Shown in pieces: positions 5,118 through 30,309 of a DNA stretch of 64,000 nucleotides. The stretch lies in the IMG/VR virus record IMGVR_UViG_3300035182_002586, positions 186,001 through 250,000 of that record. One strand, 5' to 3'. How positions within the stretch are numbered: the first letter of the stretch is position 1; every line of letters starts with the position of its first letter. Made by a program: the position numbers and the translations under genes. Under the pieces are notes generated by a model, which ran no database searches, had not been told where the DNA came from, and saw only the letters and a list, made by a program, of their open reading frames with translations.

Positions 5118-5149
5118 CTACTACAACGGAACCCTCGGGGTGATCCATC
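5118..5149 (-). promoter_or_regulatory. promoter motif A (GATGGATC-N18-TAGTAG), leaderless geometry
   Basis: One of 5 copies with an identical 18-nt spacer. The hexamer ends 4 nt before ATG 5113. Confidence 0.65.
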
Positions 5150-5159
5150 CGGTCCCCTA

Positions 5160-5165
5160 CTTATC
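5160..5165 (+). promoter_or_regulatory. putative late-promoter motif CTTATC
   Basis: The same hexamer lies upstream of several structural/lysis genes. Here it is 14 nt before ATG 5180. Confidence 0.4.
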
Positions 5166-5179
5166 CATTTCCAGCAGGT

Positions 5180-6001
5180 ATGACGTTCCCGGAAGCAGGG
5201 GCCGCCCGCGAGGCATACATCATCGACCAGGTGCGCCAGGGGCGCTTCGAGGTCGAGTTCGCGACCATCACGTCCGACTACAACGGGCACCATGCGGAGT
5301 TCCAGGTCTTCGCGGACGCCCTCAAGGTTGACGGGGTGCGCGTCAACGTGAACGCACAGACGCAGCAGATCATCGCCGACATGACCGGGTGCATGCTGCT
5401 GACCCCGAAGCTCGCGGACCTGATCTGGATGCAGCGTCAGGTGACGTTGCCCCCGATGCCGCGTCCCATCACGTCGGCGACGGCGGCGATGATCGATCAG
5501 TCGAAGAAGATCGACGCAGCCCTCGCGAAGCTCGGGAACCCCAAGGGCCTCATCTGCACGGTCGGCAAGCACTGGGTCATCGACAACGACCTCTCACAGA
5601 CCAAGCTGATCTACGGCGTCCACGGGGCCGAGAACTACGGCTGGCACTTCGAGGGGGCGAGCTACCAGGGCATCGTCGGCGAGCAGATCGCCAGCGGCTT
5701 CAAGGACCCCAATGGACGCGTCTACCGGCTCATCCAGGGCCGTGGGTGGGCGCACAACATGTCCGAGGTCGACTACTCGCAGATCTGCATCTGCGTAGCG
5801 ATCATGTGCAAGGTCGACGGGCAGGACATGGACATCCGGGACCTGCTCCGTGATCCGAATCTCGCCCCCCTCGCCAGCCACAACGGCGTGATGAAGTTCT
5901 TTCGCCAGCCGGGTGTTCCGGAGCCGACCGACCACACGATCATCATGCCGATGATCACGATCACCGCGTCGCCGGGTTCGGACCCGGACACGTCCGCCTG
6001 A
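5180..6001 (+). CDS. uncharacterised enzyme-like protein, candidate cell-wall hydrolase
   Basis: 273 aa with conserved-looking motifs LLTPKLADLIW, GKHWV, NYGWH, IQG.G.AH...DYSQ and DP.LAPL.SH.G. The function is inferred. Confidence 0.6.
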   Translation: MTFPEAGAAREAYIIDQVRQGRFEVEFATITSDYNGHHAEFQVFADALKVDGVRVNVNAQTQQIIADMTGCMLLTPKLADLIWMQRQVTLPPMPRPITSATAAMIDQSKKIDAALAKLGNPKGLICTVGKHWVIDNDLSQTKLIYGVHGAENYGWHFEGASYQGIVGEQIASGFKDPNGRVYRLIQGRGWAHNMSEVDYSQICICVAIMCKVDGQDMDIRDLLRDPNLAPLASHNGVMKFFRQPGVPEPTDHTIIMPMITITASPGSDPDTSA

Positions 6002-6021
6002 CCCGGTGTAGCGTGCCCGCC

Positions 6022-6408
6022 GTGATCGACGACATATGCCGTGCTCTTCGTGCCTGCCGGCTCCGGTTTGGCGACGAAATCGAGCTGCAAGATGGGATCG
6101 AGCGCCTGTTCCAGGCCAGGGGGTTCCTCTACGAACGCGAGGCTCAGCTCGACGAGGCAGGCCGCGTCGACTTTCTCGTCTTCGGTTCCGGTGAGGTACA
6201 GGCCCCCAGCGTCGCCATCGGCGTCGAGGTGAAGATCAAGGGGTCTACGGCTGAGGTGACACGCCAACTCCACCGGTACGCCTCGACCGGGAAACTCTCG
6301 GGCCTCGTGCTGGCCACGACGCTGATGCGGCACGCCACACAGCTCCGGATGCCCTCCCTCGGGGGTGTGGAGTTCCGCTCCCTCTACCTCTCCGGATCTG
6401 CTTTCTGA
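6022..6408 (+). CDS. PD-(D/E)xK restriction-endonuclease-like nuclease
   Basis: E...RVDFLV...GVEVK...RQLHRYA (QxxxY). GTG 6022 is chosen because it lies 7 nt after GGTG-TAGCGT; 6013 is the alternative start. Confidence 0.75.
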   Translation: MIDDICRALRACRLRFGDEIELQDGIERLFQARGFLYEREAQLDEAGRVDFLVFGSGEVQAPSVAIGVEVKIKGSTAEVTRQLHRYASTGKLSGLVLATTLMRHATQLRMPSLGGVEFRSLYLSGSAF

Positions 6409-8144
6409 TGCCCCCTCCCGTTGTCGGTACGGCCGTCTACGACGAGGACCTACGTGTCTGGCGCATCCGGGCCGAGCCCCACGTGATGATGCGCCTCAAG
6501 CGTGTCTTCGGGCGCATCGCACAGAACGCCTTCGGGGAGGTGCGGCTGTCCGCCACCGAGGAGAACTGCCGGGAGCTTGCCTGGTTCACACAGCGCTTCG
6601 CATTCGACGTAGACCGCCCCGACATTCTCCAGGAGCGCGCAGAGGCTCACAGGGGCCGGGAAGACGCCCTGGCGGGCATCTTGTCGACCGATCACGTCCC
6701 TCCCCCGTTCCACACCCTCGCCCTTCCCGCTCGCGAGTACCAACGGCTCGCGGCTGAAATGGTCCTTCGCAACGGGTCCCTTCTGTTGGCGGATGATGTA
6801 GGTCTAGGGAAGACAGCCAGTTCGATCTGCGTCCTCACGGAAGCCAACGCGCTCCCTGCCCTCGTGGTGACCCTCGCTCACCTGCCTCGCCAGTGGGAGG
6901 CCGAGATCAAGAAGTTCGCCCCCCACCTCACGACCCACGTGGTCAAGAAGGGGACCCCCTACGACCTGACGAAAGCCCCTCGGGGTTCCAAGGCACCGAA
7001 CCGGTTCCCCGACGTGATCCTGCTGAACTACCACAAGCTCGCAGGGTGGGCGGACACTCTCGCCGAGAAGGTGAAGACCGTCATCTACGACGAGGCTCAG
7101 GAGCTTCGTCATGCGGGTACGAACAAGCACGCGGCCGCGCGACACATCTCCTCGGCCACGACCTACCGCATGGGGCTCACCGCGACCCCCATCTACAACT
7201 ACGGCGGGGAGATCTACAACGTCATCGACTCCATCAGGCCGGACTCCCTCGGGACACACGAAGAGTTCATGCGCGAGTGGTGCATCGATTGGGGGTACGG
7301 AGCCCGGCCCGGGGACAAGCCCAAGATCCGAGACCCCAAAGCGTTCGGCACCTACGTGCGCAGGTCGGGCCTCATGCTCCGTCGAACCCGCGCCGAGGTT
7401 GGGCGCGAGCTGCCTGCGTTGACCCGTGCCATCCATCACGTGGACGCGGACGAAGAAGCTCTCGACCGTGTGGGAGGCAGTGCCGCCGAGCTGGCGCGCA
7501 TCATCCTCAAGCAAGGGGAGAGCAAGCAGGGCGAGAAGTTCCTTGCGAGCGAGGAGTTCAACAACATCCTCAGGCAGGCAACGGGCATCGCCAAGGCTCC
7601 GTACGTCGCGGACTTCGTGCGGCTTCTCATCGAGAGTGGGGAGAAAGTCGTCCTCTACGGGTGGCACCGCGAGGTCTACTCCCTCTGGATGCACCGGCTC
7701 GCGGATCTCAGCCCGGTGATGTACACGGGGTCGGAGTCCTCTGCGCAGAAGGATGAGTCGAAGCGCAAGTTCCTTGCAGACGAGTCCCCACTCCTCATCA
7801 TCTCACTGCGTGCGGGCGCAGGGCTCGACGGGCTCCAGCACAAGTGCCGCACAGTCGTCTTCGGGGAGCTGGACTGGTCCCCGGGCGTCCACGAACAGTG
7901 CGTTGGACGCGTCTACCGCGACGGGCAGCCGGAACCTGTGCTCGCGTACTTCTTGCTCTCCGAGACTGGTAGCGATCCGGTCGTAGCAGACACGCTCGGG
8001 CTCAAGAAGCAGCAGATCGACGGGCTTCGCGATCCTTCGGCGGACATCGTGGAGACGCTCGAAGCGGATCCCGACCGCATCAAGAAGCTCGCGGAGGCGT
8101 TCTTGAAGCAGCGCGGGATCGCTCTACCCCCTTCCGGCCCCTAG
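6408..8144 (+). CDS. SNF2-family (SF2) helicase/ATPase
   Basis: LLADDVGLGKT, DEAQ, TATP, GAGLDGLQ, WSP...QCVGRVYRDGQ. TGATG overlap with the nuclease gene. Confidence 0.93.
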   Translation: MPPPVVGTAVYDEDLRVWRIRAEPHVMMRLKRVFGRIAQNAFGEVRLSATEENCRELAWFTQRFAFDVDRPDILQERAEAHRGREDALAGILSTDHVPPPFHTLALPAREYQRLAAEMVLRNGSLLLADDVGLGKTASSICVLTEANALPALVVTLAHLPRQWEAEIKKFAPHLTTHVVKKGTPYDLTKAPRGSKAPNRFPDVILLNYHKLAGWADTLAEKVKTVIYDEAQELRHAGTNKHAAARHISSATTYRMGLTATPIYNYGGEIYNVIDSIRPDSLGTHEEFMREWCIDWGYGARPGDKPKIRDPKAFGTYVRRSGLMLRRTRAEVGRELPALTRAIHHVDADEEALDRVGGSAAELARIILKQGESKQGEKFLASEEFNNILRQATGIAKAPYVADFVRLLIESGEKVVLYGWHREVYSLWMHRLADLSPVMYTGSESSAQKDESKRKFLADESPLLIISLRAGAGLDGLQHKCRTVVFGELDWSPGVHEQCVGRVYRDGQPEPVLAYFLLSETGSDPVVADTLGLKKQQIDGLRDPSADIVETLEADPDRIKKLAEAFLKQRGIALPPSGP

Positions 8145-8168
8145 CGGTGGCCGCGGGACCGTCGCGTC

Positions 8169-8441
8169 ATGCACTCGGACCCCGAACCGCGTGAAGCCGA
8201 GCGCGGACAGAATGCACGAGAGGGAGTGCCCGAACAGGTTGTGGAAGGACCACCTCCACCGGAGCCAGCACCGCCCCCTGAACCAGGTTGGGTGAGTGTG
8301 CGCGAGAAGCTCCAGTGCGTCGTGCCCTACGACACGAAAAGGCTCCCCTTGGAGTCCATCCCCTGGGTGGGTAAGGACAACCAGGGCGTGCTCCGTCTCC
8401 ATGTGAGACGTGTCGATGCACCTTACACAGGATTCGGGTAG
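8169..8441 (+). CDS. hypothetical Pro-rich small protein
   Basis: Has the best codon bias of the three overlapping frames and follows the helicase on the same strand. Confidence 0.45.
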   Translation: MHSDPEPREAERGQNAREGVPEQVVEGPPPPEPAPPPEPGWVSVREKLQCVVPYDTKRLPLESIPWVGKDNQGVLRLHVRRVDAPYTGFG

Positions 8442-8499
8442 GAGCAGAGGCCCTAGACGAACGAACACGAAGGGAGGGTGACACCTCTCGTGAGGTTCG

Positions 8500-8823
8500 T
8501 CACCTAGGTTCCACGCGAAGAGAGACCAGTCGCCCACGGCCGCGTTTCTCTTCGGCTGCGGACCCGTAGGTGAAGCACATCTCCGCGAGCATCTTCCTCG
8601 GATAGATCATGGTGAAGTGCTGGTGCTTCGCGTCCCACCACCCCCAGTACGTGCCCGTTGGGTCGTGAGAGATCCGCACGGGCACGATGGGGTTCTTCGT
8701 GTCGCAGGATCGTACCTGCATCTCGGAGGGGAAGAAGTGCTCGTACTCCCCATTCAACTTGCGGGCCGCGAGGAGGTCGGTGAACGCCCCTTCCGGGACC
8801 TCGACGATCTGTACCTGTTCCAC
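8500..8823 (-). CDS. hypothetical phage protein
   Basis: GTG 8823 directly follows the upstream stop. Aromatic motif YWGWWD...MIYP...MCF.YG. Confidence 0.6.
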   Translation of the reverse strand: MEQVQIVEVPEGAFTDLLAARKLNGEYEHFFPSEMQVRSCDTKNPIVPVRISHDPTGTYWGWWDAKHQHFTMIYPRKMLAEMCFTYGSAAEEKRGRGRLVSLRVEPR

Positions 8824-8825
8824 GG

Positions 8826-9086
8826 CTAGACCGATCCTCGAAAGCCCATCACTCGACTGCGCCATCTCGTGAAGCTGCTCTCGTTCGGGGGCTTGCGCTT
8901 GTCCGCGTCCTGGAACGCCTCCTCCCACGAGGCCCCCTTGCCGAGCACCCACATGTCCCGGCCGAGCAAGATGCCCACCGAGAAGCTCTTGGGACTCGTG
9001 CCTGTAGTGCACCCGAAGGACCGCGCGAAGGCTCCCCACCGACGGTAGGCTTCTTGGCTAGCCTCCCCTCGTGTCATGGCCTTCAT
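8826..9086 (-). CDS. hypothetical protein
   Basis: ATG 9086 overlaps the upstream stop (ATGA); contains LGKGASWEEAF. Confidence 0.6.
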   Translation of the reverse strand: MKAMTRGEASQEAYRRWGAFARSFGCTTGTSPKSFSVGILLGRDMWVLGKGASWEEAFQDADKRKPPNESSFTRWRSRVMGFRGSV

Positions 9087-9985
9087 GGGGTCGCCTCGTC
9101 CAGGAAGCGGAGCCCCTCCTCGACCGACACACGGCACGGGCGGAGGGCGAGCTTCGGCCTCGCTTCCTCCGGCTGGCTGTCGATCACTTCCTGCGCCTTC
9201 TTCTCCGTCTCGTAGACGCACAGGCCGTGGCCGTTCGAGATGACGTGTCCGTGCTCTTCGGTGAGGACGATGCAGACCCCCTCGAAGGGCGGGCCCGCTT
9301 TGCGGAGCAGGGCATCGACGACCTTCCGGGCCGCCGGGATGACCCTGGCGAGCAGCACTTGCTGGTGCACGTGCTCCTGGACCTTCCGCGTCTTCTCCCA
9401 CTCGACCTGCTCGGGAGTCGTTGCCTCGAAGCTGTTCCTGAAGAGATCTCGGTACGAGATGAACCGGAGACCGTACTCCAGCGTGCTGAGTGCGTTCTTG
9501 TCGCCGTCTTCGGCCTCGGGGGTGCGGGTGTTGGCCCGCATGAGAATCCCACTACGGAGCTTCGCCCGGCACGCCTGGTAGATGACGCCGATCTTCGTCC
9601 ATCGGTCGAGCGTCTTCCATTCCTTGAGACGGGCAGTGAGCTTCTGCGAGGTCAGCTCGTCCGCCCACCACTCGGTACCGTCGTGTTGTTCCCCGAGCTG
9701 TCCAAGTTCGAGAAGGTCGGAGTCACTGATGTACCCGGAGTCCCGGTGCACACCACAGAGGATGTCCTGCATCGCCCCGGTCGTGCCGCAGCAGGGCCCG
9801 ATGTAGTCTTCCCCGTCTCGCGTGACGAGCTGCCACCAGTCGGCGGGCTTGAACGGGAGGTAGACCCGGTTGATGCGAGTGGGGTCCGGTTCCGGGTGCC
9901 GCCCCTTGCCTGGTTCCCCGACCCAGTTTCGTTCGTACTGGACCTTGACTCCGACTTCGGACAGACGCTTTTCGTGTTCGGTCAT
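9083..9985 (-). CDS. hypothetical protein
   Basis: ATG 9985 (MTEHEK...) lies 7 nt after GGTG-TACTCA; good codon bias. Confidence 0.7.
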   Translation of the reverse strand: MTEHEKRLSEVGVKVQYERNWVGEPGKGRHPEPDPTRINRVYLPFKPADWWQLVTRDGEDYIGPCCGTTGAMQDILCGVHRDSGYISDSDLLELGQLGEQHDGTEWWADELTSQKLTARLKEWKTLDRWTKIGVIYQACRAKLRSGILMRANTRTPEAEDGDKNALSTLEYGLRFISYRDLFRNSFEATTPEQVEWEKTRKVQEHVHQQVLLARVIPAARKVVDALLRKAGPPFEGVCIVLTEEHGHVISNGHGLCVYETEKKAQEVIDSQPEEARPKLALRPCRVSVEEGLRFLDEATP

Positions 9986-10010
9986 CCCTCTCTGAGTACA
10001 CCAGCGAGAG

Positions 10011-10887: not shown

Positions 10888-10892
10888 GACGG

Positions 10893-11435
10893 TTACTCCG
10901 CGTCCCGCACTACACCGACGGAGACCTCGACGCGCTTGCCGCGGACAGCCTCGAAGAGTTCCCTGTCCGGCTTCGGGCCGGCGTAGTAGCCCGGAGGGAC
11001 GATCAGGTGCCCTTTCCGGCAGCCCTTCATCTTGCAGCGATCCGCGTCCGGAAGGCTCGCAGGGTCGTACCCGTCCCGGGGGACGCGGAACTCCTCGAAG
11101 CCGTTGGGGTCGATCCACGCCGAGAACTCCATCGTGTGGTAGAGGGGGCTCTGAAACGTCAGACCGATGAGCGGGAGCTGGAGGATGTACGCGCTGTCGT
11201 GCTCGCAGTCCGTAGCGTCTCCGAGGTACGCCTTCAACACACACTGCTTGGAGTGCTCGTGGTACTGGAGGTTCGCCTGACCGAACCGGAGCCACCTGAT
11301 ACGGTCGCCGTACTCGTGGCAGTCGAACACGGTCACGACCGTGATGCACCGGTCCGCTTCCCGCGAGAGCTTGCGGAAGTCCGCGGGCGTCACGATGAAC
11401 GGGGCCTTCTTCACGTCCTCAGTGCTCTTCGACAT
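10893..11435 (-). CDS. hypothetical Cys/His-rich protein
   Basis: ATG 11435 overlaps the helicase stop (TGATG). Confidence 0.7.
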   Translation of the reverse strand: MSKSTEDVKKAPFIVTPADFRKLSREADRCITVVTVFDCHEYGDRIRWLRFGQANLQYHEHSKQCVLKAYLGDATDCEHDSAYILQLPLIGLTFQSPLYHTMEFSAWIDPNGFEEFRVPRDGYDPASLPDADRCKMKGCRKGHLIVPPGYYAGPKPDRELFEAVRGKRVEVSVGVVRDAE

Positions 11436-13693
11436 CACGACTCCCCGTTGGCCGGCGGGCGGCCGACCTGGCGCCAGTACTTCGTGCAGAGAGCAGCGGC
11501 CAGCTCCCACTGCTTGTCCGTGAGGCCGCTGAGGACCTCGTTCGCGAGCTTGTGGCCAATGCCACCGTCGGACGCGTTGAAGCCCACGTCGTTCTGCATG
11601 CGGGCGCGATCCGGGTCGAGACCGGCGAGCGTGAGCACCGCCGACATGGCCCACTTGTCACGGGCGCTGGCGGGACCACGACGCGCGGGCTCGTCGGCCG
11701 GCTGCACGTGACGCAGCTCGGGAGGGAGCATTCGGTTCTCGGCGACGGCCTTCGCACGCTCCTCGGCGTATCGGGCGATACGCTCCTCGGCGTTCTTCTT
11801 CGCCTCGTCGGCCTTGCGGGCCTCGTTCGCCGCTTCCTCCGCCAGCCGAGCGAAGTCAACCTCGGGGAGGAGGACCGGTTCCACCGAGTCCCCCGCGCGG
11901 ATGCGGGAAGCATCGACCGAAGCGTTGATCATCGCCTGCTTCGAGGCGAGGAGCGTGAAGATGCGCGCGTCGAGCGGGTGCTCCGCGACGATTTGCGTGA
12001 TGACGACGCCACGGCTTTGACCTATGCGACACACGCGATCTTCCGCCTGTTCGTTCAAAGCGGGCGTGAATTCCTGGTCGAGGAAGATGGCGTGGCACGC
12101 CTTCGTCAGCGTGATCGCGACGCCACCGGCCTTGATGGTCGCGGCGATGCCCTTGAGCTTGCCATTCTGAAAGTCTTCCTCGATGCGCGACCGCTCTTCG
12201 GCGGGGATCTCGCCGGTGATCTTCGCCCACCCCTCACGAGTGGCGAGAAGGTCGACCGCCGCGAGGTGCGCGGAGAAGACCACGACAGGCTCTTCCTGCT
12301 CCTCGTAATCCGAGACCATCTCCAAGAGAGCGGGGATCTTCGCGCGGGCGAGCATCTCGCGGGCGCGGGAGAACTCCGTGAAGCTCGTCCCGTCCATCCG
12401 GGCGATCTTCGCGCGGGCGTCTTCGATCGACTCCAGGGCGAGGGGCTCCGGAAGGTCCGCCTCGAAGGGATCCTCGTCGCTGATGATCCGGTCCCACAGG
12501 GACGGGGACTGCGCGCGGAGGATGTTCATCGCCTTGTCGCACGCCTTCACGGCCTTGGCGTCGATCGACACGCTGACCTGGCGGTAGGTCTTCACCGGCA
12601 GCTCGGGGAGCACGTCGATGCGCATGCGGCGCAGCGAGACCTTGCGCAAGTGCTTGGTGACCAGCGCCTCGTCCGGGGTGCCCCACTCGTAACCGTAGTC
12701 GCCACGCCACCCGTTGAAGGCGACGCAGAAGTTGTCCCAACTGCCGAACGCCTCGCGGGCGATGTCGGCCGCCTGGAGGACCGACCAGATCTCCTGCGGG
12801 CGGTTGAGGAGGGGCGTGGCCGTGAGCAGCCAGACCTTGCCCTGGTTCTTACGGACCAGCTCCGACATGTTGCGGAAGCGGGTCGTGCGCAGCGCCTTCG
12901 AGTTCTTGACCGCGTGGGCCTCGTCCGCGATGAGGACCGTGCCACACGCGCAGTTGCCCACCAGCTCCGCCGGGAGGATGTCGTAGTTGATGACGATGAC
13001 CTCGCCGGCCTGCGGCCAGCGGAAGCTACCGCGACCCGACAGGACTTCGATCTTGAGGTCGGGGCGCCATTTGGCCGCCTCGCGCTTCCACACGCCCTTC
13101 GCGACCGCCGGGGCCACGATGATGACGGGGGACTTCTTCGGGATCGCGAGAAGCGCCTGGACCGTCTTGCCGAGGCCCATCTGGTCCGCGAGGAGCGCGC
13201 CCCACCGGTTGGTGAGCCAACGGACGCCCTCACGCTGGAACGGGAAGAGGAACAGGCCGCGCCCACGGAGAAGCGCGTCGGCCTCGTCGAGGCGCCCTTC
13301 GGCCTCGGTCACACCGGCCTTGAAGTCCGCCGCCTTGGCCTGGAGGGCCGCCGACAGCTCCGGGAGCATGTCGAGCACGAAGCCCGACTTGCGAAGCTGA
13401 TCGACGATGAACATCGCCTTGTCGAGCGACGCGACGTTCACCCGGCGCGTGCCGTCGTAGCGGGCGCTGGCCGTAGCCGCGCGATACTCACCGAAACGGT
13501 CACCGAGGAAGCCGTGGATGCGAAAGAGGACGTTCTGGCCGTCGCGCGCGACCTCGATCTTGACGGAATCGAGTTCCCCGGCGCAGAGGGCGCACTTGGT
13601 GACCCACGGGGGGCCGAACACGAAGCCCTGGCCCACGCCCACGTTCGCGCCGCAGCCAGAACAAGCACCCGCGTAGTAGTTCTTTCGAGCCAT
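11435..13693 (-). CDS. SNF2-family helicase with N-terminal Zn ribbon, possibly SMARCAL1/HARP-like
   Basis: CSGC...CALC, LLADQMGLGKT, DEAH, TATP, GVAITLT, QAEDRVCRIGQ. ATG 13693 lies 4 nt after motif A. Confidence 0.93.
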   Translation of the reverse strand: MARKNYYAGACSGCGANVGVGQGFVFGPPWVTKCALCAGELDSVKIEVARDGQNVLFRIHGFLGDRFGEYRAATASARYDGTRRVNVASLDKAMFIVDQLRKSGFVLDMLPELSAALQAKAADFKAGVTEAEGRLDEADALLRGRGLFLFPFQREGVRWLTNRWGALLADQMGLGKTVQALLAIPKKSPVIIVAPAVAKGVWKREAAKWRPDLKIEVLSGRGSFRWPQAGEVIVINYDILPAELVGNCACGTVLIADEAHAVKNSKALRTTRFRNMSELVRKNQGKVWLLTATPLLNRPQEIWSVLQAADIAREAFGSWDNFCVAFNGWRGDYGYEWGTPDEALVTKHLRKVSLRRMRIDVLPELPVKTYRQVSVSIDAKAVKACDKAMNILRAQSPSLWDRIISDEDPFEADLPEPLALESIEDARAKIARMDGTSFTEFSRAREMLARAKIPALLEMVSDYEEQEEPVVVFSAHLAAVDLLATREGWAKITGEIPAEERSRIEEDFQNGKLKGIAATIKAGGVAITLTKACHAIFLDQEFTPALNEQAEDRVCRIGQSRGVVITQIVAEHPLDARIFTLLASKQAMINASVDASRIRAGDSVEPVLLPEVDFARLAEEAANEARKADEAKKNAEERIARYAEERAKAVAENRMLPPELRHVQPADEPARRGPASARDKWAMSAVLTLAGLDPDRARMQNDVGFNASDGGIGHKLANEVLSGLTDKQWELAAALCTKYWRQVGRPPANGES

Positions 13694-13697
13694 GCTC

Positions 13698-13729
13698 CCT
13701 CTACCCCACGACCCCGGAGGCGATCCATC
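13698..13729 (-). promoter_or_regulatory. promoter motif A (GATGGATC-N18-TAGAGG), leaderless geometry
   Basis: Same geometry as the copy at 5118-5149. Confidence 0.65.
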
Positions 13730-13800
13730 CAGGGGGGTCGACATTTCCTCGGTTCGAGGAGGGGAGGGGGTTCCGGGGGCTCATAGCCCCATGTACACCG

Positions 13801-14250: not shown

Positions 14251-14262
14251 GCGGGCGTCCTC

Positions 14263-14290
14263 AGGGTAGCTCGGGCGTGGTTTGGGTCAA
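14263..14290 (-). promoter_or_regulatory. possible sigma70-type promoter TTGACC-N16-TACCCT
   Basis: Read on the minus strand, 12 nt upstream of ATG 14250. Confidence 0.35.
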
Positions 14291-14331: not shown

Positions 14332-14979
14332 ATGTCTCATCCACGTCGAATCGAGTGTTTCTTGATCGAGAGCACGAATGACCACTGGGTCTACCTGCGC
14401 CGGTACCGATCGACGTACCCTGAGGCCGGGCAGTGCCCTCGCGCCCCCGGTGCATACCACAACGCCGAAGCCCTGATCAGCGAAATCCAGGCAGAGATGC
14501 CTGTGTCGGGCGACCTGGGTGTGCCCCATGACGACCCGCGGTGGCCTCTCAAGTGTGATCACTGCGCCTACATCTTCCAGCCGGAGGACCAGTGGCAGGT
14601 CAACCACCGGCGGAAGTACGTGCACCAGGCCACAGGGCGAACCTACGCGCTCACCGGCCCCGAGAACTGCAACACAGACAAGTCCATCGACGCCCCCGTT
14701 GGAGCGCTCTGGCGTGCAGACTGGCTCGAAGATCTCGACTGGCGGGGCCCGGACGGCAAGAGCTACATCGTGCGGACACCCGGGGGCGACTGGACCATCG
14801 ATGGCCCGTCCACCACCGGCGGAGGGGTTCGTCAGTCCAAGGAGAGCGGTGGAGGCTGGACGCGCAGCGGGGAAGCACCCCACTTCACCGTCCGTCCCTC
14901 CATCCTGATCGGGAAGCAACCGAACGGGAGCTACACGTACCACGGCTTCATGAACGCCGGGTTCCTCGACGAGTGCTAG
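14332..14979 (+). CDS. Zn-binding protein with C-terminal DUF6527-like segment
   Basis: CDHC, and C-terminal WTRSG..P.FTVRPSILI......YHGF..AG.L resembling DUF6527. Confidence 0.6.
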   Translation: MSHPRRIECFLIESTNDHWVYLRRYRSTYPEAGQCPRAPGAYHNAEALISEIQAEMPVSGDLGVPHDDPRWPLKCDHCAYIFQPEDQWQVNHRRKYVHQATGRTYALTGPENCNTDKSIDAPVGALWRADWLEDLDWRGPDGKSYIVRTPGGDWTIDGPSTTGGGVRQSKESGGGWTRSGEAPHFTVRPSILIGKQPNGSYTYHGFMNAGFLDEC

Positions 14980-15389
14980 GTCTTCGGGGTCTCTACAGGG
15001 TCCCCGGCGAAGGTCAGGGGCTCTCCGTGCGGGTCCCACGGTAGTTGGACCCGCAGACCCTTCTTCTTGCCGTTGCACACGGTGCAACGCTCCAGCACGC
15101 CGCCGATGCACCCATTGTGAGGGACGCGCCCCACCCCCTGACAGGCGCGGCACGGCCCGTTCTCCATTCTGAGGGGGTTGTCCTCGTAGTAGTCGACGAG
15201 ACGTGTAGCTTCCTCCGTCGTCAGGTGGTCGTTGCTGCGAAAGAAGGCGATCGCAGCCTGTGCCCTTTCGTCTCGCCATGCACCCCACACGTGGTCGTAC
15301 TCCGCGAGCACGATCCGGGCGGGCGACCCTTCTGGCTCCAGGGCGATCTTGGCGCGCAGCTCAGTCCACTCGGCTTTGGAGAGGGGCAT
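14976..15389 (-). CDS. hypothetical protein with DnaJ-type CxxCxGxG zinc finger
   Basis: CRACQGVG...CTVCNGK; ATG lies 6 nt after GGTG-TAGAGC. Confidence 0.7.
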   Translation of the reverse strand: MPLSKAEWTELRAKIALEPEGSPARIVLAEYDHVWGAWRDERAQAAIAFFRSNDHLTTEEATRLVDYYEDNPLRMENGPCRACQGVGRVPHNGCIGGVLERCTVCNGKKKGLRVQLPWDPHGEPLTFAGDPVETPKT

Positions 15390-15395
15390 GGGCGG

Positions 15396-15420
15396 GCTCT
15401 ACACCGGGTTGGTGTAAGGG
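15396..15420. promoter_or_regulatory. back-to-back pair of GGTGTA motifs (TACACC-N5-GGTGTA) between divergent genes
   Basis: TACACC at 15400-15405 and GGTGTA at 15411-15416 within a 49-bp divergent gap. Confidence 0.6.
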
Positions 15421-16947: not shown

Positions 16948-18396
16948 CTACTTCGCACTGTACTTCCGAAAGAAGTCGGGGTCTTTGAGGGCAAGGGACA
17001 CCATCTTCGCGCCGAGACGGGAGAGGGCGTGGTCGAACTCGTCCGTCAGATGCCCCCCGTACTCGTGCGACAGCTCGTGGATCAGGAGGTCGTTCACCTC
17101 TTCGGTCGCCCCCCGCTCGAACCACTTCTTGCCGAGGCGGTCGTGATTGAACGTGAGCTGCGCGCCGCCGTAGTTCGCGGCCCACCGGTCCGTCATGCGC
17201 CCTCGCTCGAAGTGCACGTCGACGGAACGGCCGAGGAGCTTCCACGCCAGCTCGTGGGCGTAGGTCGCCAGGTTCGTCATCCCGGGGGTCCACTCGGACT
17301 CGGGGATGTAGCGAGCGTCCCTCGCATCCGGGTCGTTGCTGTAAGGCTTCGGCGTAGGCGCGATGCGCCCCGAGGGAAGGGTAGCGCCAGTGCTACGGAT
17401 GTTCCTCCAGGCGTCCTTCGAGAACGTTCCGCCGGGGATCACTGTGTACCCGTCGGCCACGAGGCGGCGATTCGCCTCCGGATCCGTGGGGTCGAAGATG
17501 GCGCGCTTCTCCCCAAACTGGTGGGTGAGCACCGTGTCCACGGCTTCGGCGACGACACGCTCATCCGCGAGTGCTTCCTGGATCGCCGGGAGTGCGGCCT
17601 GGTCGGGCCGAAGGGTCTCGTGTATCTCGTTCAGCACGAGGACCGCCAGCTCCCGCGCATAGGCGGGAGTCACGTTGTCCCGATCCGAGTTGAGAGGGAT
17701 CTTCTGCATGACCTCGACCGTCCACGGGAGGTCAGTCTCGACGACGGGGATCCCCATCTCGTAGATACGCGAGACGTTATCGATCGGCTCGTACACACGG
17801 ATGGTGGTCTTGCGCGCCGTCTTGCGCAGGTAGCCTTCCGCGTCAGCGATCTCCGTGGGCAACGTGGCCTCGAACGTCCGAAGAGGGGTCCGGATGGGGA
17901 TGACTTCGTTGTTCAGCGTCGTGGGGACCGGAGGAAGCAGCAGCTTCGCGGCCCGGATCACTTGCGCGTACTCGTCGCGCGTCATGCGCAACACGCAGTA
18001 GAAGATAGAGCCTCGTTCGAGATGGTTCCGAACAGGGCGCCGGCCGTTCTTGTCGAAGGCGAAGCCCCCCTTGGTCGAGAGGACCTCGGCCTTCTCGCAT
18101 GCGGCGAGCACGAGCTTCTCGCCGAGGTTGAAACGCCCTCGCTTCGTGGGGTCGCTTTTCTTGTTCGATTCCGCGTACAGCGTGAACGCGTGCGTCAGGT
18201 CCGCGAAGCCATCCGGGTCGTCGTCCTCGACGAGCATCGTCACGAGAGGGCGCCCCTCGACAGGCTCCATCTTCACCGTGACTTTGCTGGTCTTGGTGTC
18301 CCACGCGTTCTGGACCAGCTCGTAGAGGATGAACTCCATCCCCTTACGCTTGAGCAACTTGGCCAGACCCTCACGGTCAACTTCGAACCAACCCAT
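16948..18396 (-). CDS. GHKL-family ATPase with C-terminal HExxH (zincin-like) motif
   Basis: ELVQNAWD (N box), VEDDDPDG (G1), GRFNLGEK (G2); C-terminal LLIHELSH...H...F. Confidence 0.8.
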   Translation of the reverse strand: MGWFEVDREGLAKLLKRKGMEFILYELVQNAWDTKTSKVTVKMEPVEGRPLVTMLVEDDDPDGFADLTHAFTLYAESNKKSDPTKRGRFNLGEKLVLAACEKAEVLSTKGGFAFDKNGRRPVRNHLERGSIFYCVLRMTRDEYAQVIRAAKLLLPPVPTTLNNEVIPIRTPLRTFEATLPTEIADAEGYLRKTARKTTIRVYEPIDNVSRIYEMGIPVVETDLPWTVEVMQKIPLNSDRDNVTPAYARELAVLVLNEIHETLRPDQAALPAIQEALADERVVAEAVDTVLTHQFGEKRAIFDPTDPEANRRLVADGYTVIPGGTFSKDAWRNIRSTGATLPSGRIAPTPKPYSNDPDARDARYIPESEWTPGMTNLATYAHELAWKLLGRSVDVHFERGRMTDRWAANYGGAQLTFNHDRLGKKWFERGATEEVNDLLIHELSHEYGGHLTDEFDHALSRLGAKMVSLALKDPDFFRKYSAK

Positions 18397-18438
18397 GGAT
18401 CCTCCTACACCGCGGGGGCAGCGAAGCCTCCCGTACCC

Positions 18439-18470
18439 CCTCTACAACGTGACCTTGGGGGTGATCCATC
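18439..18470 (-). promoter_or_regulatory. promoter motif A (GATGGATC-N18-TAGAGG)
   Basis: 18-nt spacer; a GGTGTA motif follows at 18406-18411. Confidence 0.65.
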
Positions 18471-19989: not shown

Positions 19990-20021
19990 GATGGATCATG
20001 ATACCCCTCCCATTGTAGAGA
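19990..20021 (+). promoter_or_regulatory. promoter motif A (GATGGATC-N18-TAGAGA), leaderless geometry
   Basis: 18-nt spacer; the hexamer ends 5 nt before ATG 20027. Confidence 0.6.
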
Positions 20022-20026: not shown

Positions 20027-20194
20027 ATGTCCCGCAAGAACAAGGTCGAGATCATCAAGGTCGAAGAGCCCACGCCCCGCAGCGCCGTGGCGCTCGCGAT
20101 GCAGCGCCGCTACGGCTACGGCGTGAAGATCTTCAAGGATCGCCGCGCCCCCCGCGGCGGCGCCAAGCGCCAGGATCACCACGAGGGTTGGTGA
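20027..20194 (+). CDS. small basic hypothetical protein (55 aa)
   Basis: Very strong GC3 bias, own promoter motif, KDRRAPRGG motif. Confidence 0.7.
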   Translation: MSRKNKVEIIKVEEPTPRSAVALAMQRRYGYGVKIFKDRRAPRGGAKRQDHHEGW

Positions 20195-21779: not shown

Positions 21780-21791
21780 TCCTGCGTGGGG

Positions 21792-22903: not shown

Positions 22904-22906
22904 GTC

Positions 22907-23530: not shown

Positions 23531-23545
23531 GGGGAAGCCTCCCGT

Positions 23546-24454: not shown

Positions 24455-24456
24455 GA

Positions 24457-25014: not shown

Positions 25015-25017
25015 GGC

Positions 25018-25434: not shown

Positions 25435-25464
25435 AAGGGGGAAGCCCTTTCACCCCCTACCGGG

Positions 25465-25471
25465 GATAAGA
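25465..25471 (-). promoter_or_regulatory. putative late-promoter motif TCTTATC
   Basis: In the intergenic gap upstream of the holin-like gene. Confidence 0.45.
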
Positions 25472-25486
25472 AAAACAGGGAGATCG

Positions 25487-25756
25487 TCAGTTCTCCTTGA
25501 CTTTGACGCCTTCCGTCAGAGAGACGACGTGACTGGTGGAACGCGTCACGTTGACCTCAGGGTCCAACGAGCTGACGGACAGCTCGCCGGCCTCCCACTT
25601 GTCGATCTCCACGAGCTTGCTGTGGATGGTCGCTGCCTGGTCCGGCGTCAGAACGGGGCTGGAGAGATGGTCGTGGAGGCGCTTACGCGCCACCGCGGCT
25701 GCTTCCCGTCGCTGCTCTACCGGGATGTCCAGGTAGTTCATGTGCTTGACGGCCAT
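25487..25756 (-). CDS. small hypothetical protein
   Basis: ATG 25756 overlaps the upstream stop (TGATG). Confidence 0.7.
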   Translation of the reverse strand: MAVKHMNYLDIPVEQRREAAAVARKRLHDHLSSPVLTPDQAATIHSKLVEIDKWEAGELSVSSLDPEVNVTRSTSHVVSLTEGVKVKEN

Positions 25757-28700: not shown

Positions 28701-30096
28701 CAACACCACTGCCGACCGAAGCGATCTTGTCCTGGTACGCGACGAACGGACCCTGCGGCCCCGCGCCCGAGCGTTTCCAGTTGGCGCGGAGCTGTCCGCG
28801 CACGAGCTTGTCGAGGTTCGTTCGAAGCATCGCCTCGTAGTCGAACCCGTTCGGGTTGATCGCGTGGCGGAGATCGAGCACGTCGGTCGACGCGATCTGG
28901 TCCGAGAAGAGACCGTCAGGACGGCCTGACATGACCACGACCGGAGTGCCCGCTGCGTGCGTCTCGGCGCGGGTGCCGTTGACGCCACGGATCACGCCCG
29001 TGACGTTCGTACCCGTGATGCCCGCGTACGTCATCAGCTCGTCGCCGACCTTGATGAGGACCGGGAATGCAGGCGTCGCCGGGAGCGGCACCCCCGAGGA
29101 GGACGCCAGAACGAACGTCGTCGCAGCGGCCGTGATGGACGAAGCGAGCGTCGGAACCGTCGAGAACGTTAGGATTCCGGTTCGGTCGACCGCGAGCGGG
29201 TTCCGGTTGAACGCGCCGTTGAGGTTCTGGCTCGGGTCTCCCGACCAGGCCACGCCGTTGCGACGGAAGACGGCGGCGATCGGGATGGCGTACGTGTAGC
29301 CGTCGACCGTGCCGAGAGCGTTCGAGGTTCCATCCCCAGCTCGCCACAGACCGGGATCCCCCAGCGTGGTGCGCATGTTCTGGAAGATGAATGACGTCGG
29401 AGAAGCCGCAGCGCCCTGCGCCTTGACGATCGCCGGGTCGAAGCCGTCCGGGTTGCTCGTGAGACCCACGAGCCCCTTCGCGACACGGATGCGGTACTGG
29501 AGCTGGAGCCTCTGCGTCGTCTCGAAGCCGATGGCCGGATCGACGAGATCATCGGGGAGGAACGCGAAGCCACCCTCGACGTTGCCGTAGCGCCAGATGG
29601 CGGACCCTGCCGGCTTGTTCGTGGTCGACGGGTTCGGCGGGATACGCGCGACCCACGCCTCCAGGAACACGAAGTCGACTCGGAAGTCACCGCTGTTCGC
29701 GGGCGGGGGATCGAGAGCGATCACGTTCGTCGTGTCGCTGTTGTTCGGTGCACCGGGAGGCGTACCCGTACGCGTGCCTGCGACGGGGATGAGCCACCCG
29801 TTGACCGCAGCCCACATGACCGATTGGGTTTCGCCCGTGCGCTGACGTCCGAAGCGGAGCCAGTTCGACCACGCGGGGTTCGTCTGGAAGTCCGACGGGA
29901 GACTGGTTTCGTTGCCAAGCCAACCAGACGGGGTGTCTCGGAGGGCGCCCGTTCGGTGCTCCTCGTTCGAGATCTGCTGGAGGAAGTTCAACTCGGAGTC
30001 GAGCGGCGGCTTCCCTTCCTGCCAGAGAACCTGGAGGAATGCAGTACCTTGAGGGGCAAGAACCCGGGAGACCCCACCACCGAAGTTGTCGGTCAT
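25756..30096 (-). CDS. large virion structural protein (baseplate/tail-associated, DUF4815-like N-terminus)
   Basis: 1446 aa, G/T/P-rich and beta-rich. N-terminal WQEGKPPLDSELN; the first ~450 aa are paralogous to 43042-45630. Confidence 0.7.
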   Translation of the reverse strand: MTDNFGGGVSRVLAPQGTAFLQVLWQEGKPPLDSELNFLQQISNEEHRTGALRDTPSGWLGNETSLPSDFQTNPAWSNWLRFGRQRTGETQSVMWAAVNGWLIPVAGTRTGTPPGAPNNSDTTNVIALDPPPANSGDFRVDFVFLEAWVARIPPNPSTTNKPAGSAIWRYGNVEGGFAFLPDDLVDPAIGFETTQRLQLQYRIRVAKGLVGLTSNPDGFDPAIVKAQGAAASPTSFIFQNMRTTLGDPGLWRAGDGTSNALGTVDGYTYAIPIAAVFRRNGVAWSGDPSQNLNGAFNRNPLAVDRTGILTFSTVPTLASSITAAATTFVLASSSGVPLPATPAFPVLIKVGDELMTYAGITGTNVTGVIRGVNGTRAETHAAGTPVVVMSGRPDGLFSDQIASTDVLDLRHAINPNGFDYEAMLRTNLDKLVRGQLRANWKRSGAGPQGPFVAYQDKIASVGSGVALGVTRLDGADDIRMIFSDAAALQPVELIAKANGVAVPSPSNVGWSLSLTVTHTTRATPSVFSPNDVLSIPISQFKSGLPGGDADQVRFVNDGYAHAVDIRVDGQTTPVSASLYTVTPANPGPNDDLVITLGPSFPATGNQLYITAHVVYGAGRGLSRKPDSMHSVNYISPSTELLLQQSGVVPTNLPTRITWAPLWSKYRSAMYKNSLPSTAETYGDLGSKTVILQPFRRIVWPTEFRTMDGTSANVAPTSFTTGTVGVGAGSTTFTDASKNFVTAGTQIGDVLVVALGGAAGTYVVTAVAPGADVTKLTLATSMPVAVGVNYTLSHAQNLMPLLKADAATPKWATTDPLQLFSGTTFPTASTNNLYVTLPRHLVPGWGEVRCPILWQDAASTNFAEGVNFMCLSKKGASFTDGDKNYVPYSNGSLSYAIFSTFNFNPPGTPATYNAAFTFGGITFAGLRFFTDTRGLGRMGLELPPFYGIARLFAVYEAGDYQANGSAYNPTTRAPTGAGARNLLRQDFQGPTFWVEIDDDGDSTFIINADALDLSKSVLNPITSFASGNYVIESSIFGFDRGSFDLNHEFRLVLTRPTSTSLMRNQAVDPVRTNNVNAIINGPTSVLPGPATGTDQVVVNYSRTPYQGDAWGSQTSYSDIGYAPGPLTSGVAYQLSTTHLIPNGLTRPNQKVLEVLASVGFATTLGTGRFSGDTKNPTLLLTNAFDFRNVGYEDPTVYPPVSPIAARPRVLIDGAASGEATLIEADTAYLGATERLPLGALWRDKDFRGGSLGLGDGTAGTFVYLGNTGVGTLMAGLAQMSALEQSEAPLNAASTASGAPGDVVVHVDGEQGNYSLLVNFRTNRGGSAFTASGSHPGGEVVAAQGQIQAPAGHTNVITGRAFLVRNAPTSVGATEVSPGDELMMLVITNGVQLKDTNPKTSYIAISTNGTAEGTAAADLYRIEGHPLLTNNVHYAVDPSTIILSPRLT

Positions 30097-30238
30097 TTCT
30101 GCGATCCCTTCTGCATCCGGGGCCGCATCAATGGAAGCGCGGCCTCCCCGTGCGGAAGCATGAAAAGAAACGCGAGGGTGGCCCCTTGGCCCCGGTCGGG
30201 CACGAGACCTCCGGATGGGCTATGCCGCTGGTGTGGTC

Positions 30239-30270
30239 CGAGAATGTCCGAACGGGCACGAGAATGTCCG
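30239..30270 (+). repeat. 12-bp direct repeat CGAGAATGTCCG x2, 20-bp period, putative operator
   Basis: Copies at 30239-30250 and 30259-30270, ending 7 bp upstream of motif A. Confidence 0.6.
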
Positions 30271-30277
30271 CCCCCTC

Positions 30278-30309
30278 GATGGATCGCCCCCGGGGTCGCG
30301 CTGTACAGG
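30278..30309 (+). promoter_or_regulatory. promoter motif A (GATGGATC-N18-TACAGG)
   Basis: 18-nt spacer, followed by AGGAG SD and ATG 30326. Confidence 0.65.

What the first reader, a model, noticed from the sequence alone, without database searches (positions are those of the whole stretch)
5118..30309. Bipartite promoter-like element GATGGATC-N18-TASWRR, five copies with invariant spacing
Copies lie at 5118-5149(-), 13698-13729(-), 18439-18470(-), 19990-20021(+) and 30278-30309(+). All are intergenic and point into the adjacent gene, with exactly 18 nt between TGGATC and TAGTAG/TAGAGG/TAGAGG/TAGAGA/TACAGG. Four spacers share RCCYCSRRGGT. In three cases the ATG is only 4-5 nt after the hexamer. 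The regulon would be a Zn protein, a SNF2 helicase, the GHKL-HExxH protein, a 55-aa basic protein and the surface lipoprotein. Inference: an immediate-early promoter class with a non-canonical -35. The core contains GATC, so methylation sensitivity is possible.
Basis: partly seen in the sequence, partly recalled or inferred. Interest (0 to 1): 0.65.

Follow-up and report, generated by a model that had tools for sequence, protein, structure and literature searches.

The report
Leaderless promoter class of a megaphage
The five repeats are real. They belong to a set of 66 near-identical two-part promoters in a 529-kb phage genome, most placed so that the mRNA would begin at the ATG, and they are probably read with a phage-encoded sigma-like factor.

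Summary
The window is part of a 528,957-bp IMG/VR virus record, cut from a 620-kb metagenome contig.

- **Count:** the genome has 78 GATGGATC. 66 are followed after 17 nt (18 sites) or 18 nt (48 sites) by TA(G), and a reversed-pattern control gives 0. The other 12 match the number expected by chance.
- **Box:** it is essentially invariant, with about 11 one-mismatch boxes against 7 in the control.
- **Position:** 92% of motif bases are intergenic and the sites face same-strand genes. In 45 of 66 sites the T of TAG lies 10-11 nt before a called ATG.
- **Start site:** the base before that ATG is a pyrimidine in 51 of 51 cases, against 59% for SD-led genes. Copies with longer leaders carry their own SD. 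This points to a sigma-type promoter producing mostly leaderless mRNAs.
- **Relatives:** huge-phage relatives (SNF2 49-57% identical) keep the element before orthologous genes, with lineage variants (GGTGGATC, RATGGACC).
- **Second class:** yGGTGTA-N9-12-ATG has at least 110 copies, shares the -10 core and never carries the box.
- **Candidate reader:** no RNA polymerase gene was found. A divergent ECF-like sigma (393 aa) sits behind this promoter here and in relatives.

"Immediate-early" timing and GATC methylation sensitivity remain untested, and some relatives lack the GATC. The host is unknown. No RNA data were available.

The parts
5118..5149 (-). Class A promoter 1: box GATGGATC 5142-5149, 18-nt spacer, TAGTAG 5118-5123, then 4 nt to ATG at 5113. 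Predicted leaderless.
4229..5113 (-). Downstream gene, 294 aa, one CxxC near the N-terminus, PHROG 17208 (unknown function)
13698..13729 (-). Class A promoter 2: box 13722-13729, TAGAGG 13698-13703, then 4 nt to ATG at 13693. Predicted leaderless. The element is conserved before SNF2 orthologs in relatives.
11435..13693 (-). SNF2-family helicase, 752 aa
   Evidence: SNF2-rel_dom 1.5e-23, Helicase_C 1.7e-11
18439..18470 (-). Class A promoter 3: box 18463-18470, TAGAGG 18439-18444, 42-nt leader with GGAGG before the ATG at 18396
18406..18411 (-). Class B element GGTGTA, 9 nt before the same ATG (18396). It forms a tandem A + B promoter pair on the GHKL gene.
16948..18396 (-). GHKL-type ATPase with HExxH at residue 440, 482 aa
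19990..20021 (+). Class A promoter 4: box 19990-19997, TAGAGA 20016-20021, then 5 nt to ATG at 20027. Predicted leaderless.
20027..20194 (+). 55-aa basic protein (14 K+R, 6 D+E), no family match
30278..30309 (+). Class A promoter 5: box 30278-30285, TACAGG 30304-30309, 16-nt leader with AGGAG before the ATG at 30326
30326..31348 (+). Lipoprotein-like protein, 340 aa (signal peptide with lipobox LAAC, acidic repeats, below-cut-off Lcl_C match)
1708..1715 (+). Sixth GATGGATC, without the downstream half and inside a gene on the other strand. A chance copy, not part of the class.
15400..15405 (-). Class B element GGTGTA, 10 nt before the ATG of gene 14976-15389(-). It forms a TACACC/GGTGTA palindrome with a + strand copy at 15411-15416.
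9997..10002 (-). Class B element GGTGTA, 11 nt before the ATG of gene 9083-9985(-)
3907..3912 (-). Class B element GGTGTA, 9 nt before the ATG of gene 3403-3897(-)

Best explanation
The element is one of at least two phage-specific promoter classes of an uncultivated 529-kb (contig 620-kb) phage.

**Anatomy.** Class A is GATGGATC, a 17- or 18-nt spacer whose 3' half reads yCnC-R-Y-K-G, then TAG-w-r-G, then 4 nt ending in C, then ATG.

**Proposed mechanism.** The cell's core RNA polymerase carries a sigma-type specificity factor that contacts both halves. The GATGGATC box acts as a -35 element and C-R-Y-K-GTA as an ECF-like -10 element. Transcription starts at the A of the ATG, so most transcripts are leaderless. 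Where the gene starts further downstream, the transcript has an ordinary SD leader.

**Likely reader.** The factor is most likely phage-encoded. The prime candidate is a divergent ECF-like sigma of 393 aa (genome 93,299-94,480), whose own gene lies behind a class A promoter, as is common for ECF sigmas.

**Relation to class B.** Class B (yGGTGTA-N9-12-ATG, no box) shares the -10 core. The box would therefore be what sets class A apart, probably in time.

**Shown versus inferred.** Shown: motif statistics, position, orientation, conservation in relatives, and the sigma fold of the candidate.
For: **1. Number and invariance**
- 66 complete copies against 0 for the reversed pattern.
- One-mismatch boxes are at control level, 11 against 7.
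- The 12 lone boxes equal the chance expectation.

**2. Position**
- 92% of motif bases are intergenic in a genome that is 14% intergenic.
- 58 of 66 have a same-strand gene start within 60 nt.
- 45 of 66 have it exactly 10-11 nt after the T.

**3. Bipartite behaviour**
- The box-to-TA distance is 17 or 18 nt while the TA-to-ATG distance stays fixed.

**4. Start at the ATG**
- The -1 base is a pyrimidine in 51 of 51 cases (48 C), against 84% in class B and 59% in SD-led genes.
- The hexamer sits 2-3 nt closer to the ATG than the genome's SD peak.
- Copies with leaders of 16-48 nt carry separate SDs.

**5. Conservation**
- The same architecture lies before SNF2 orthologs that are 53-56% identical in protein, while flanking DNA is not conserved (alignment A2).
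- Relatives carry several copies per 22 kb, with lineage variants GGTGGATC and RATGGACC.

**6. No polymerase gene found**
- No RNA polymerase beta-prime domain was found, and the control rang in 14 of 14 genomes.
- There is no DFDGD motif and no T7-type hit.

**7. The sigma candidate**
- Sequence matches are weak but collinear: Pfam Sigma70_r2 0.024, PHROG 1740 sigma factor 1.2e-4, TIGR02937 0.0019.
- 17 of 40 family members hit Sigma70_r2.
- The AlphaFold model has pLDDT 79.8. About 16 of its best 20 VIA matches are sigma factors, at Z 5.5-7.1.
- Its orthologs in L156, L195, L157 and L196 are also preceded by box-type promoters.

**8. ECF behaviour in the literature**
- ECF sigmas need near-consensus promoters, use 16-18-bp spacers and often autoregulate (PMC7776599).

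**9. Relation between the classes**
- Class A never has GGT before GTA (0 of 49) and class B never has the box.
Against: - No transcript data of any kind: no RNA run was listed, so the start site and the timing are inferred.
- The sequence and fold evidence for the sigma is individually weak. E-values are 0.02 to 1e-4, Foldseek gave nothing below 0.28, and the VIA Z values are in a range the tool calls middling.
- If the 393-aa sigma reads class A, its only visible promoter is class A. A fresh infection would then need some other source of the first sigma molecules.
- Nothing links that sigma to class A rather than class B.
- The phage also has other candidate readers: two region-4-only proteins and a 221-aa protein that shares the sigma's inserted domain.
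- About 90 kb of the original contig was cut off by IMG/VR and was not examined.
Confidence: 0.6

Rival explanations
1. Activator-box model, which works like T4 middle promoters. The GATGGATC box is bound by a separate phage DNA-binding protein that takes the place of the -35 contact. Candidates are the 215-aa protein with two region-4-like HTH motifs, the 117-aa region-4-only protein, and the 221-aa protein that shares the sigma's inserted domain. The GTA core is read by the same sigma that serves class B.
For: - Classes A and B share the core C-G-n-T-GTA. They differ at one position and in the presence of the box, and they are mutually exclusive.
- The phage encodes stand-alone region-4 proteins (Sigma70_r4 5.6e-18 and 2.4e-11).
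- The 221-aa protein lies behind a class A promoter.
Against: - The 117-aa protein keeps the RERVRQ recognition-helix residues. From my own knowledge these are typical of primary sigmas that read TTGACA, which does not fit GATGGATC (sequence).
- No MotA or AsiA relatives were looked for.
- The 393-aa sigma has its own C-terminal helical domain of region-4 type, so it does not need a substitute.
Confidence: 0.22
2. A host sigma factor, for example an alternative or ECF sigma, reads the element. Class A would then be truly immediate-early, and the phage sigma expressed from it would switch on class B and later genes.
For: - This solves the bootstrapping problem, because both regulator genes (393 aa and 221 aa) lie behind class A promoters.
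- Primary-sigma-like promoters are scarce, with 7 intergenic candidates.
- Class A genes look early: small unknown ORFs and a GmrSD_N-domain protein. Class B genes look like middle functions: ArgRS, ClpX-like, D12 methyltransferase.
Against: - The box varies between phage lineages (GATGGATC, GGTGGATC, RATGGACC), as expected if it co-evolves with a phage factor.
- Within a genome it is invariant to a degree typical of phage-specific factors.
- The strict pattern gave only single, chance-level hits in GTDB genomes and in 401 genomes of the Sorangium phylum. The true host is unknown, and a small host regulon could escape this search.
Confidence: 0.14
3. It is not a promoter. It is an RNA-level or translational element, with TAGAGG acting as an SD, or a small mobile repeat.
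For: The hexamer is purine-rich and SD-like (TAGGAGG in a few copies), and many copies sit in a region of small genes.
Against: - A 4-nt gap to the ATG is shorter than the genome's own SD spacing.
- TAG is the conserved part, not GGAGG.
- Leadered copies have a second, properly placed SD.
- The 17/18 spacer variation and the pyrimidine at -1 have no translational meaning.
- Spacers and flanks are unrelated between copies and there are no terminal repeats, so these are not recent copies of a mobile element.
Confidence: 0.04

Closest known systems
Promoters of phage-encoded sigma factors (Bacillus phage SPO1 gp28 middle and gp33/34 late promoters; own knowledge, not tested here)
   Same: A phage-specific two-block consensus, unlike the host's, with a 17-18-nt spacer. 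It occurs in tens of copies and is read by host core polymerase with a phage sigma, as part of a temporal cascade.
   Different: The sequence is different.
ECF (group 4) sigma promoters
   Same: A -35 block of GGAxC type, a 15-16-nt gap to a short G-T-rich -10 block, a near-consensus requirement, and a sigma gene preceded by its own promoter type (PMC7776599). The candidate sigma has only sigma-2-like and sigma-4-like domains.
   Different: The -10 block is KGTA rather than CGT(C/A). The candidate sigma has an insertion of about 120 aa inside domain 2 and only marginal sequence similarity to ECF models.
T4 middle promoters (MotA box plus sigma-70 -10) and T4 late promoters (TATAAATA, gp55); own knowledge
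   Same: One class has an upstream box and another is -10-only, within one phage. The -10-only motif is invariant. A gp55 complex is among the structural matches of the candidate sigma (7d7d_F, Z 5.7).
   Different: No MotA or AsiA homologs were sought or found, and here both classes share one -10 core.
Leaderless mRNAs of Actinobacteria and Deinococcus, and phage lambda cI from PRM
   Same: A -10 element at a fixed short distance before the start codon, with the transcription start at the A of AUG. In Deinococcus deserti, 47% of mRNAs start exactly at the initiation codon and 60% at or very near it (PMC4007540 abstract).
   Different: Those use the primary sigma's TAnnnT. Here the last hexamer position is G (38 of 48), not T.
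phiKZ early and middle promoters
   Same: A giant phage with two promoter motifs, where some genes carry both (PMC8244752). The GHKL gene here likewise has A and B in tandem.
   Different: phiKZ uses its own polymerases and no leaderless transcripts were detected. Here no polymerase gene was found and about a quarter of genes look leaderless.

Membership tests
Primary-sigma (sigma-70/SigA) promoter | -35 hexamer close to TTGACA | tested here: not met
   The block is an invariant GATGGATC.
Primary-sigma (sigma-70/SigA) promoter | -10 hexamer TAnnnT with conserved final T | tested here: not met
   The last hexamer position is G in 38 of 48 and T in 1 of 48.
Primary-sigma (sigma-70/SigA) promoter | Spacer of 17 +/- 1 bp between the two blocks | tested here: met
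   48 copies have N18 and 18 have N17, counted from the box to TA.
ECF-sigma-type promoter | Two short conserved blocks about 16-18 bp apart, near-consensus in all members | tested here: met
   GGATC is followed by 15-16 nt and then KGTA. The box is invariant in 66 copies. The spacer range comes from PMC7776599.
ECF-sigma-type promoter | -10 block of CGT/GTC type | tested here: inconclusive
   The block is C-R-Y-K-G-T-A-G. GT is invariant, but the preceding base is T or G, not C.
ECF-sigma-type promoter | A cognate ECF sigma whose own gene carries the promoter | tested here: inconclusive
A sigma-like gene (393 aa) lies behind a class A promoter here and box-type promoters precede its orthologs in 4 of 5 relatives.
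Sigma-70 family protein (for the 393-aa candidate) | Sigma domain 2 and domain 4 recognisable by sequence or fold | tested here: inconclusive
   All matches of the protein itself are below curated cut-offs. 17 of 40 homologs hit Sigma70_r2. The top structural matches are mostly sigma factors, but at Z 5.5-7.1.
Leaderless mRNA genes | Transcription start at, or within a few nt of, the start codon | not testable with these tools
   No RNA run was listed. Indirect support comes from the fixed 10-nt T-to-ATG distance, 51 of 51 pyrimidines at -1, and no SD at the normal distance.
Sigma-54 promoter | GG and GC doublets exactly 10 bp apart (TGGCAC-N5-TTGC) | tested here: not met
   The GG of the box and the conserved TG/GG before TA are about 20 nt apart.
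Single-subunit (T7-like) or phage multisubunit polymerase promoter | A phage-encoded RNA polymerase and a contiguous promoter with fixed geometry | tested here: not met
   There was no PF00623 hit (control 14 of 14), no DFDGD motif and no PF00940 hit, although that control was uninformative. The two blocks move by 1 nt relative to each other. The trimmed 90 kb of the contig was not searched.
T4-type middle promoter (sigma appropriation) | An activator bound to a box near -30, plus a co-factor remodelling region 4 of the host sigma | not tested
   No search for MotA or AsiA relatives was made. Region-4-only proteins exist, but their role is unknown.

The most novel reading that the evidence does not exclude
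A whole clade of 300-760-kb phages may run its early programme with a sigma factor that has a DNA-binding-like domain inserted into sigma domain 2. This sigma would read a three-part promoter (invariant box, conserved spacer 3' half, GTA core) and start exactly on the AUG. A single base before GTA (G or Y) would decide whether the box is needed. To start the cascade, the sigma would have to be carried in the virion or made from a few host-type promoters.
Probability: 0.15. Interest if true: 0.75.

Novelty: new member of a known kind. Interest (0 to 1): 0.5.

Why it matters
For uncultivated huge phages almost nothing is known about gene regulation. Here the sequence alone gives a readable regulatory code: two mutually exclusive promoter classes covering roughly a quarter of the genes, both fused to start codons, and a short list of candidate readers. 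That has three uses:
- It makes the transcription programme of a megaphage clade testable in vitro without culturing it.
- It gives exact gene starts for about 160 genes.
- It implies a host whose ribosomes handle leaderless mRNAs well, which narrows the search for the host.

Tried and rejected
- **Phage collection:** megablast of 13 kb of the window against GenBank phages gave no match.
- **Strict pattern in IMG/VR:** 5 single hits.
- **Sorangium phylum:** 2 hits in 401 genomes, and a chance-level count for the loose pattern in one Sorangium genome. No other genome shows a cluster, so close kin are not in those collections and no host regulon was seen.
- **The search for related loci with the 1838-aa protein:** nothing.
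- **Relatives and handles:** Whole relatives' genomes could therefore not be scanned, only about 20-kb pieces.
- **RNA runs:** none was listed.
- **Rfam:** a scan of the window and two loci found only a tRNA.
- **Spacer hairpin or operator idea:** spacers are not enriched for inverted repeats. It survives only as a local feature of the four window copies.
- **Likeness to the 16S 3' end:** 'TGGATCAC' resembles the 3' end of 16S rRNA, but the base after the box is G in 34 of 48 and the following bases vary. I treated this as coincidence.
- **Foldseek against PDB for the sigma model:** no hit below E 0.28.
- **Pfam on the six largest window proteins:** nothing.
- **Phage hallmarks:** terminase and HK97-capsid Pfam models gave only sub-threshold hits, so the viral nature rests mainly on IMG/VR's call and on the relatives.


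Full report
**1. The observation**

The pattern GATGGATC-N18-TA occurs five times in the window, at the coordinates and strands given. Shuffles of the window give 0.02 on average. A sixth GATGGATC at 1708 lacks the downstream half and lies inside a gene.

**2. Where the window lies**

The window is bases 186,001-250,000 of a 528,957-bp IMG/VR virus record with 63.9% G+C. The same SNF2 protein is on JGI metagenome contig 3300035182 Ga0373636_0000001, which is 620,031 bp long. IMG/VR therefore trimmed about 90.6 kb from one end, and I could not read that part.

The record carries 53 tRNA genes, a tmRNA and a CRISPR-like array. Its proteins have relatives on metagenomic contigs of 300-760 kb. Pfam models for terminase and HK97 capsid gave only sub-threshold hits.

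**3. Genome-wide census**

- There are 78 GATGGATC in the genome. 48 are followed by N18-TA and 18 by N17-TA. The reversed-pattern control gives 0.
- From base composition about 12 GATGGATC are expected by chance, which accounts for the 12 without the downstream half.
- Allowing one mismatch in the box adds 11 sites, against 7 in the reversed control. The 8-mer is therefore practically invariant.
- The logo shows no conservation upstream of the box. After it comes an R, a C-rich stretch, and then yCnC-R-Y-K-G-T-A-G-w-r-G-G-n-n-C-A-T-G.

**4. Position relative to genes**

No gene caller was on hand, so I called genes with a codon-composition model. This gave 703 genes covering 86% of the genome. 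The start choice did not use the motif.

- 92% of motif bases are intergenic.
- 58 of 66 sites have a same-strand start within 60 nt.
- In 40 sites the T of TAG is exactly 10 nt before the called ATG, and in 5 more it is 11 nt.

The box-to-TA distance takes two values while the TA-to-ATG distance is fixed. That is the behaviour of a two-block, sigma-type promoter, not of a contiguous recognition site.

**5. Is the hexamer a -10 element or a Shine-Dalgarno?**

Four observations argue for a -10 element:
- In genes without the box, GGAG-type words peak 10-13 nt before the start. In class A the purine run begins at -8.
- The conserved letters are T-A-G, not GGAGG.
- Copies whose gene starts 16-48 nt further on have a separate, normally placed SD.
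- The base before the ATG is a pyrimidine in 51 of 51 leaderless-type copies (48 C). It is a pyrimidine in 84% of class B and 59% of SD-led ATG genes.

A pyrimidine at -1 and a purine at +1 is the usual preference of bacterial RNA polymerase at the start site (established knowledge). It has no role in a leaderless mRNA, because the -1 base would not be transcribed. I therefore take the A of the ATG as the start site. This is an inference, since no RNA run was listed for this sequence.

**6. A second class**

A k-mer screen of intergenic DNA and a follow-up found yGGTGTA followed after 9-12 nt by the ATG of at least 110 genes. There is no conservation upstream of it.

An unbiased scan of all coding ATGs with GTA 8-12 nt upstream splits cleanly:
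- Without the box, 109 of 203 have [C/T/A]GGT before GTA.
- With the box, 0 of 49 do. They have C-R-Y-K instead.

The two -10 regions therefore align as C-G-(G or Y)-T-G-T-A. The classes are mutually exclusive.

Both classes are concentrated in the regions of small genes at 420-529 kb and 0-20 kb. Both are absent from the 220-280-kb block of very large genes.

Known functions differ by class:
- Class A: SNF2 helicase, GHKL ATPase, a GmrSD_N-domain protein, lipoprotein-like proteins, the sigma-like gene, and many unknowns.
- Class B: arginyl-tRNA synthetase, a ClpX-like ATPase, a D12 methyltransferase, SPFH and others.

The GHKL gene in the window has both, in tandem.

**7. Relatives**

Pieces of about 20 kb around SNF2 orthologs (49-56% protein identity) were fetched.

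| Locus | Element before the SNF2 ortholog | Other copies in the locus |
|---|---|---|
| L149 | GATGGATC-N18-TAG-N4-ATG | two more |
| L151 | GATGGATC-N18-TAG, ATG 6 nt after the hexamer | one more, box GTGGATC |
| L152 | GGTGGATC | three more, one of them GATGGATC |
| L150 | TTTGATC-N17-TACAGG-N4-ATG | none found |
| L148 | RATGGACC | several |

In an alignment of the six SNF2 upstream regions, only box letters, G..GTA and ATG are invariant (A2). Class B elements also occur before genes in these loci.

The element is therefore under selection across a clade, and its box changes between lineages.

**8. Who reads it?**

*No polymerase gene.* No polymerase beta-prime domain was found, and the control rang in 14 of 14 genomes. 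There is no DFDGD motif and no T7-type hit. Host core polymerase is therefore implied.

*Region-4-only proteins.* Region-4 models hit two proteins that lack region 2:
- a 117-aa protein at 479,437-479,790;
- a 215-aa protein at 71,524-72,171.

*The 393-aa candidate.* A 393-aa protein at 93,299-94,480 gives weak but collinear sigma signals:
- TIGR02937 0.0019;
- Sigma70_r2 0.024;
- PHROG 1740 1.2e-4;
- an Atlas neighbour named as a region-2 protein.

Its family has 155 clusters in the 1.8-billion-protein library. 17 of 40 aligned members hit Sigma70_r2, and the best PDB profile hits are sigma factors at E about 0.05.

The AlphaFold model from that alignment has pLDDT 79.8. Foldseek found nothing significant. 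In the exhaustive VIA search, about 16 of the best 20 chains are sigma factors or their domain 2, at Z 5.5-7.1. The tool itself calls that range middling.

*Inserted domain.* Domain 2 is interrupted by an insertion of about 120 aa. This insertion recurs in a 221-aa protein at 491,832-492,497.

*Promoters of the regulator genes.* Both genes lie behind class A promoters with SD leaders. Orthologs of the 393-aa protein are preceded by box-type promoters in L156 (GATGGATC), L195 (GGTGGATC, before an in-frame internal ATG), L157 (AATGGACC) and L196 (AATGGACT), but not clearly in L197.

*Fit to ECF behaviour.* ECF sigmas need near-consensus promoters, use 16-18-bp spacers, and about half autoregulate (PMC7776599). 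This fits, but it does not prove that this sigma reads class A rather than class B.

*Bootstrapping.* The sigma gene's only visible promoter is class A. Seven intergenic sites resemble primary-sigma promoters, and none leads into the sigma gene.

**9. Methylation and the spacer**

- The phage has two D12-class adenine methyltransferases, one of them behind a class B promoter.
- GATC is neither avoided nor enriched, with observed/expected 0.96.
- The RATGGACC and AATGGACT lineages have no GATC in the box, and L148 still encodes a D12 enzyme. A role for methylation is possible in this phage but is not part of the conserved mechanism.
- The spacer pattern RCCYCSRRGGT occurs only in the four window copies (4 of 66), and spacers are not palindromic overall. 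It could be a local operator or shared ancestry of these four. It is not seen in relatives' SNF2 promoters.

**10. Comparison with known systems**

The closest known systems are promoters of phage-encoded sigmas (SPO1; own knowledge) and ECF-type promoters. The box-plus-core and core-only pair recalls T4 middle and late promoters.

The leaderless design recalls Actinobacteria and Deinococcus (PMC4007540). It contrasts with phiKZ, where no leaderless transcripts were found (PMC8244752).

No paper in the library uses this motif in this sense.

**11. Verdict**

This is a real, clade-conserved, phage-specific promoter class that yields mostly leaderless mRNAs. It is a new member of a known kind.

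The host is unknown. The strict pattern is at chance level in GTDB genomes and in 401 genomes of the Sorangium phylum.

Noticed in passing
G000:C1 about 501,200-501,860 (+), outside the window: CRISPR-like array: 9 copies of a 36-nt repeat (starts GTCTCGGCGTACC, ends GTTCCTAG) with spacers of about 37 nt. A related contig from the same metagenome (L196) carries type I-C-like cas genes (Cas5d, Csd1, Cas7) near its sigma ortholog.
   Followed up: no
G000:C1 123,254-176,528 (+), outside the window: 53 tRNA genes, a tmRNA (tag ANDNGTVITALKAAA) and a tRNA with anticodon TTA (would read UAA), all on one strand.
   Followed up: no
window 3907-3912(-), 9997-10002(-), 15400-15405(-), 18406-18411(-); at least 110 copies genome-wide: Second promoter-like class, yGGTGTA-N9-12-ATG, without any upstream block. 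It often occurs as back-to-back TACACC-N4-7-GGTGTA palindromes serving divergent genes, for example window 15400-15416.
   Followed up: partly
G000:C1 93,299-94,480 (+) and 491,832-492,497 (+): A sigma-like protein with an insertion of about 120 aa (residues about 135-255) inside sigma domain 2. The same domain stands at the C-terminus of a separate 221-aa protein. One family member hits Pfam HTH_17 at 2.4e-4. I did not check which part of that member matches. The domain's function is unknown.
   Followed up: partly
G000:C1 479,437-479,790 (+) and 71,524-72,171 (-): Two proteins consisting of sigma region 4 without region 2: 117 aa (Sigma70_r4 5.6e-18, with an RERVRQ helix like primary sigmas) and 215 aa (two region-4-like HTH motifs). 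They could be decoys or substitutes for the host sigma's region 4.
   Followed up: partly
window 25756-63650 (-): A run of very large ORFs (1446, 2460, 724, 862, 1838 and 1647 aa) with no Pfam match. They are part of a 220-280-kb block that has neither promoter class. The 1838-aa protein has homologs at 44-59% identity on contigs of up to 530 kb.
   Followed up: partly
whole record: IMG/VR labels the record 'provirus' and cut it from a 620,031-bp contig. By my coordinate arithmetic about 90.6 kb at one end and about 0.45 kb at the other were removed. Whether the removed part is host or phage was not checked.
   Followed up: no
window 14263-14290 (-) and 31501-31528 (+); five more genome-wide: Only 7 intergenic sites resemble a primary-sigma promoter (TTGACA with at most 1 mismatch, N16-18, TAnnnT). 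These are possible host-read entry points of the programme.
   Followed up: no
G000:C1 122,249-122,275 (-) and 135,328-135,354 (+): Two class A promoters without a normal gene behind them. One is followed by ATG-TCC-TAC-TGA (a 3-codon ORF). The other is followed by about 2 kb without a called gene, and Rfam found nothing there.
   Followed up: partly
G000:C1 15,807-16,541 (-) and 507,493-508,101 (-): Two D12-class (Dam-family) adenine methyltransferase genes. Relatives carry one near their SNF2 gene.
   Followed up: partly
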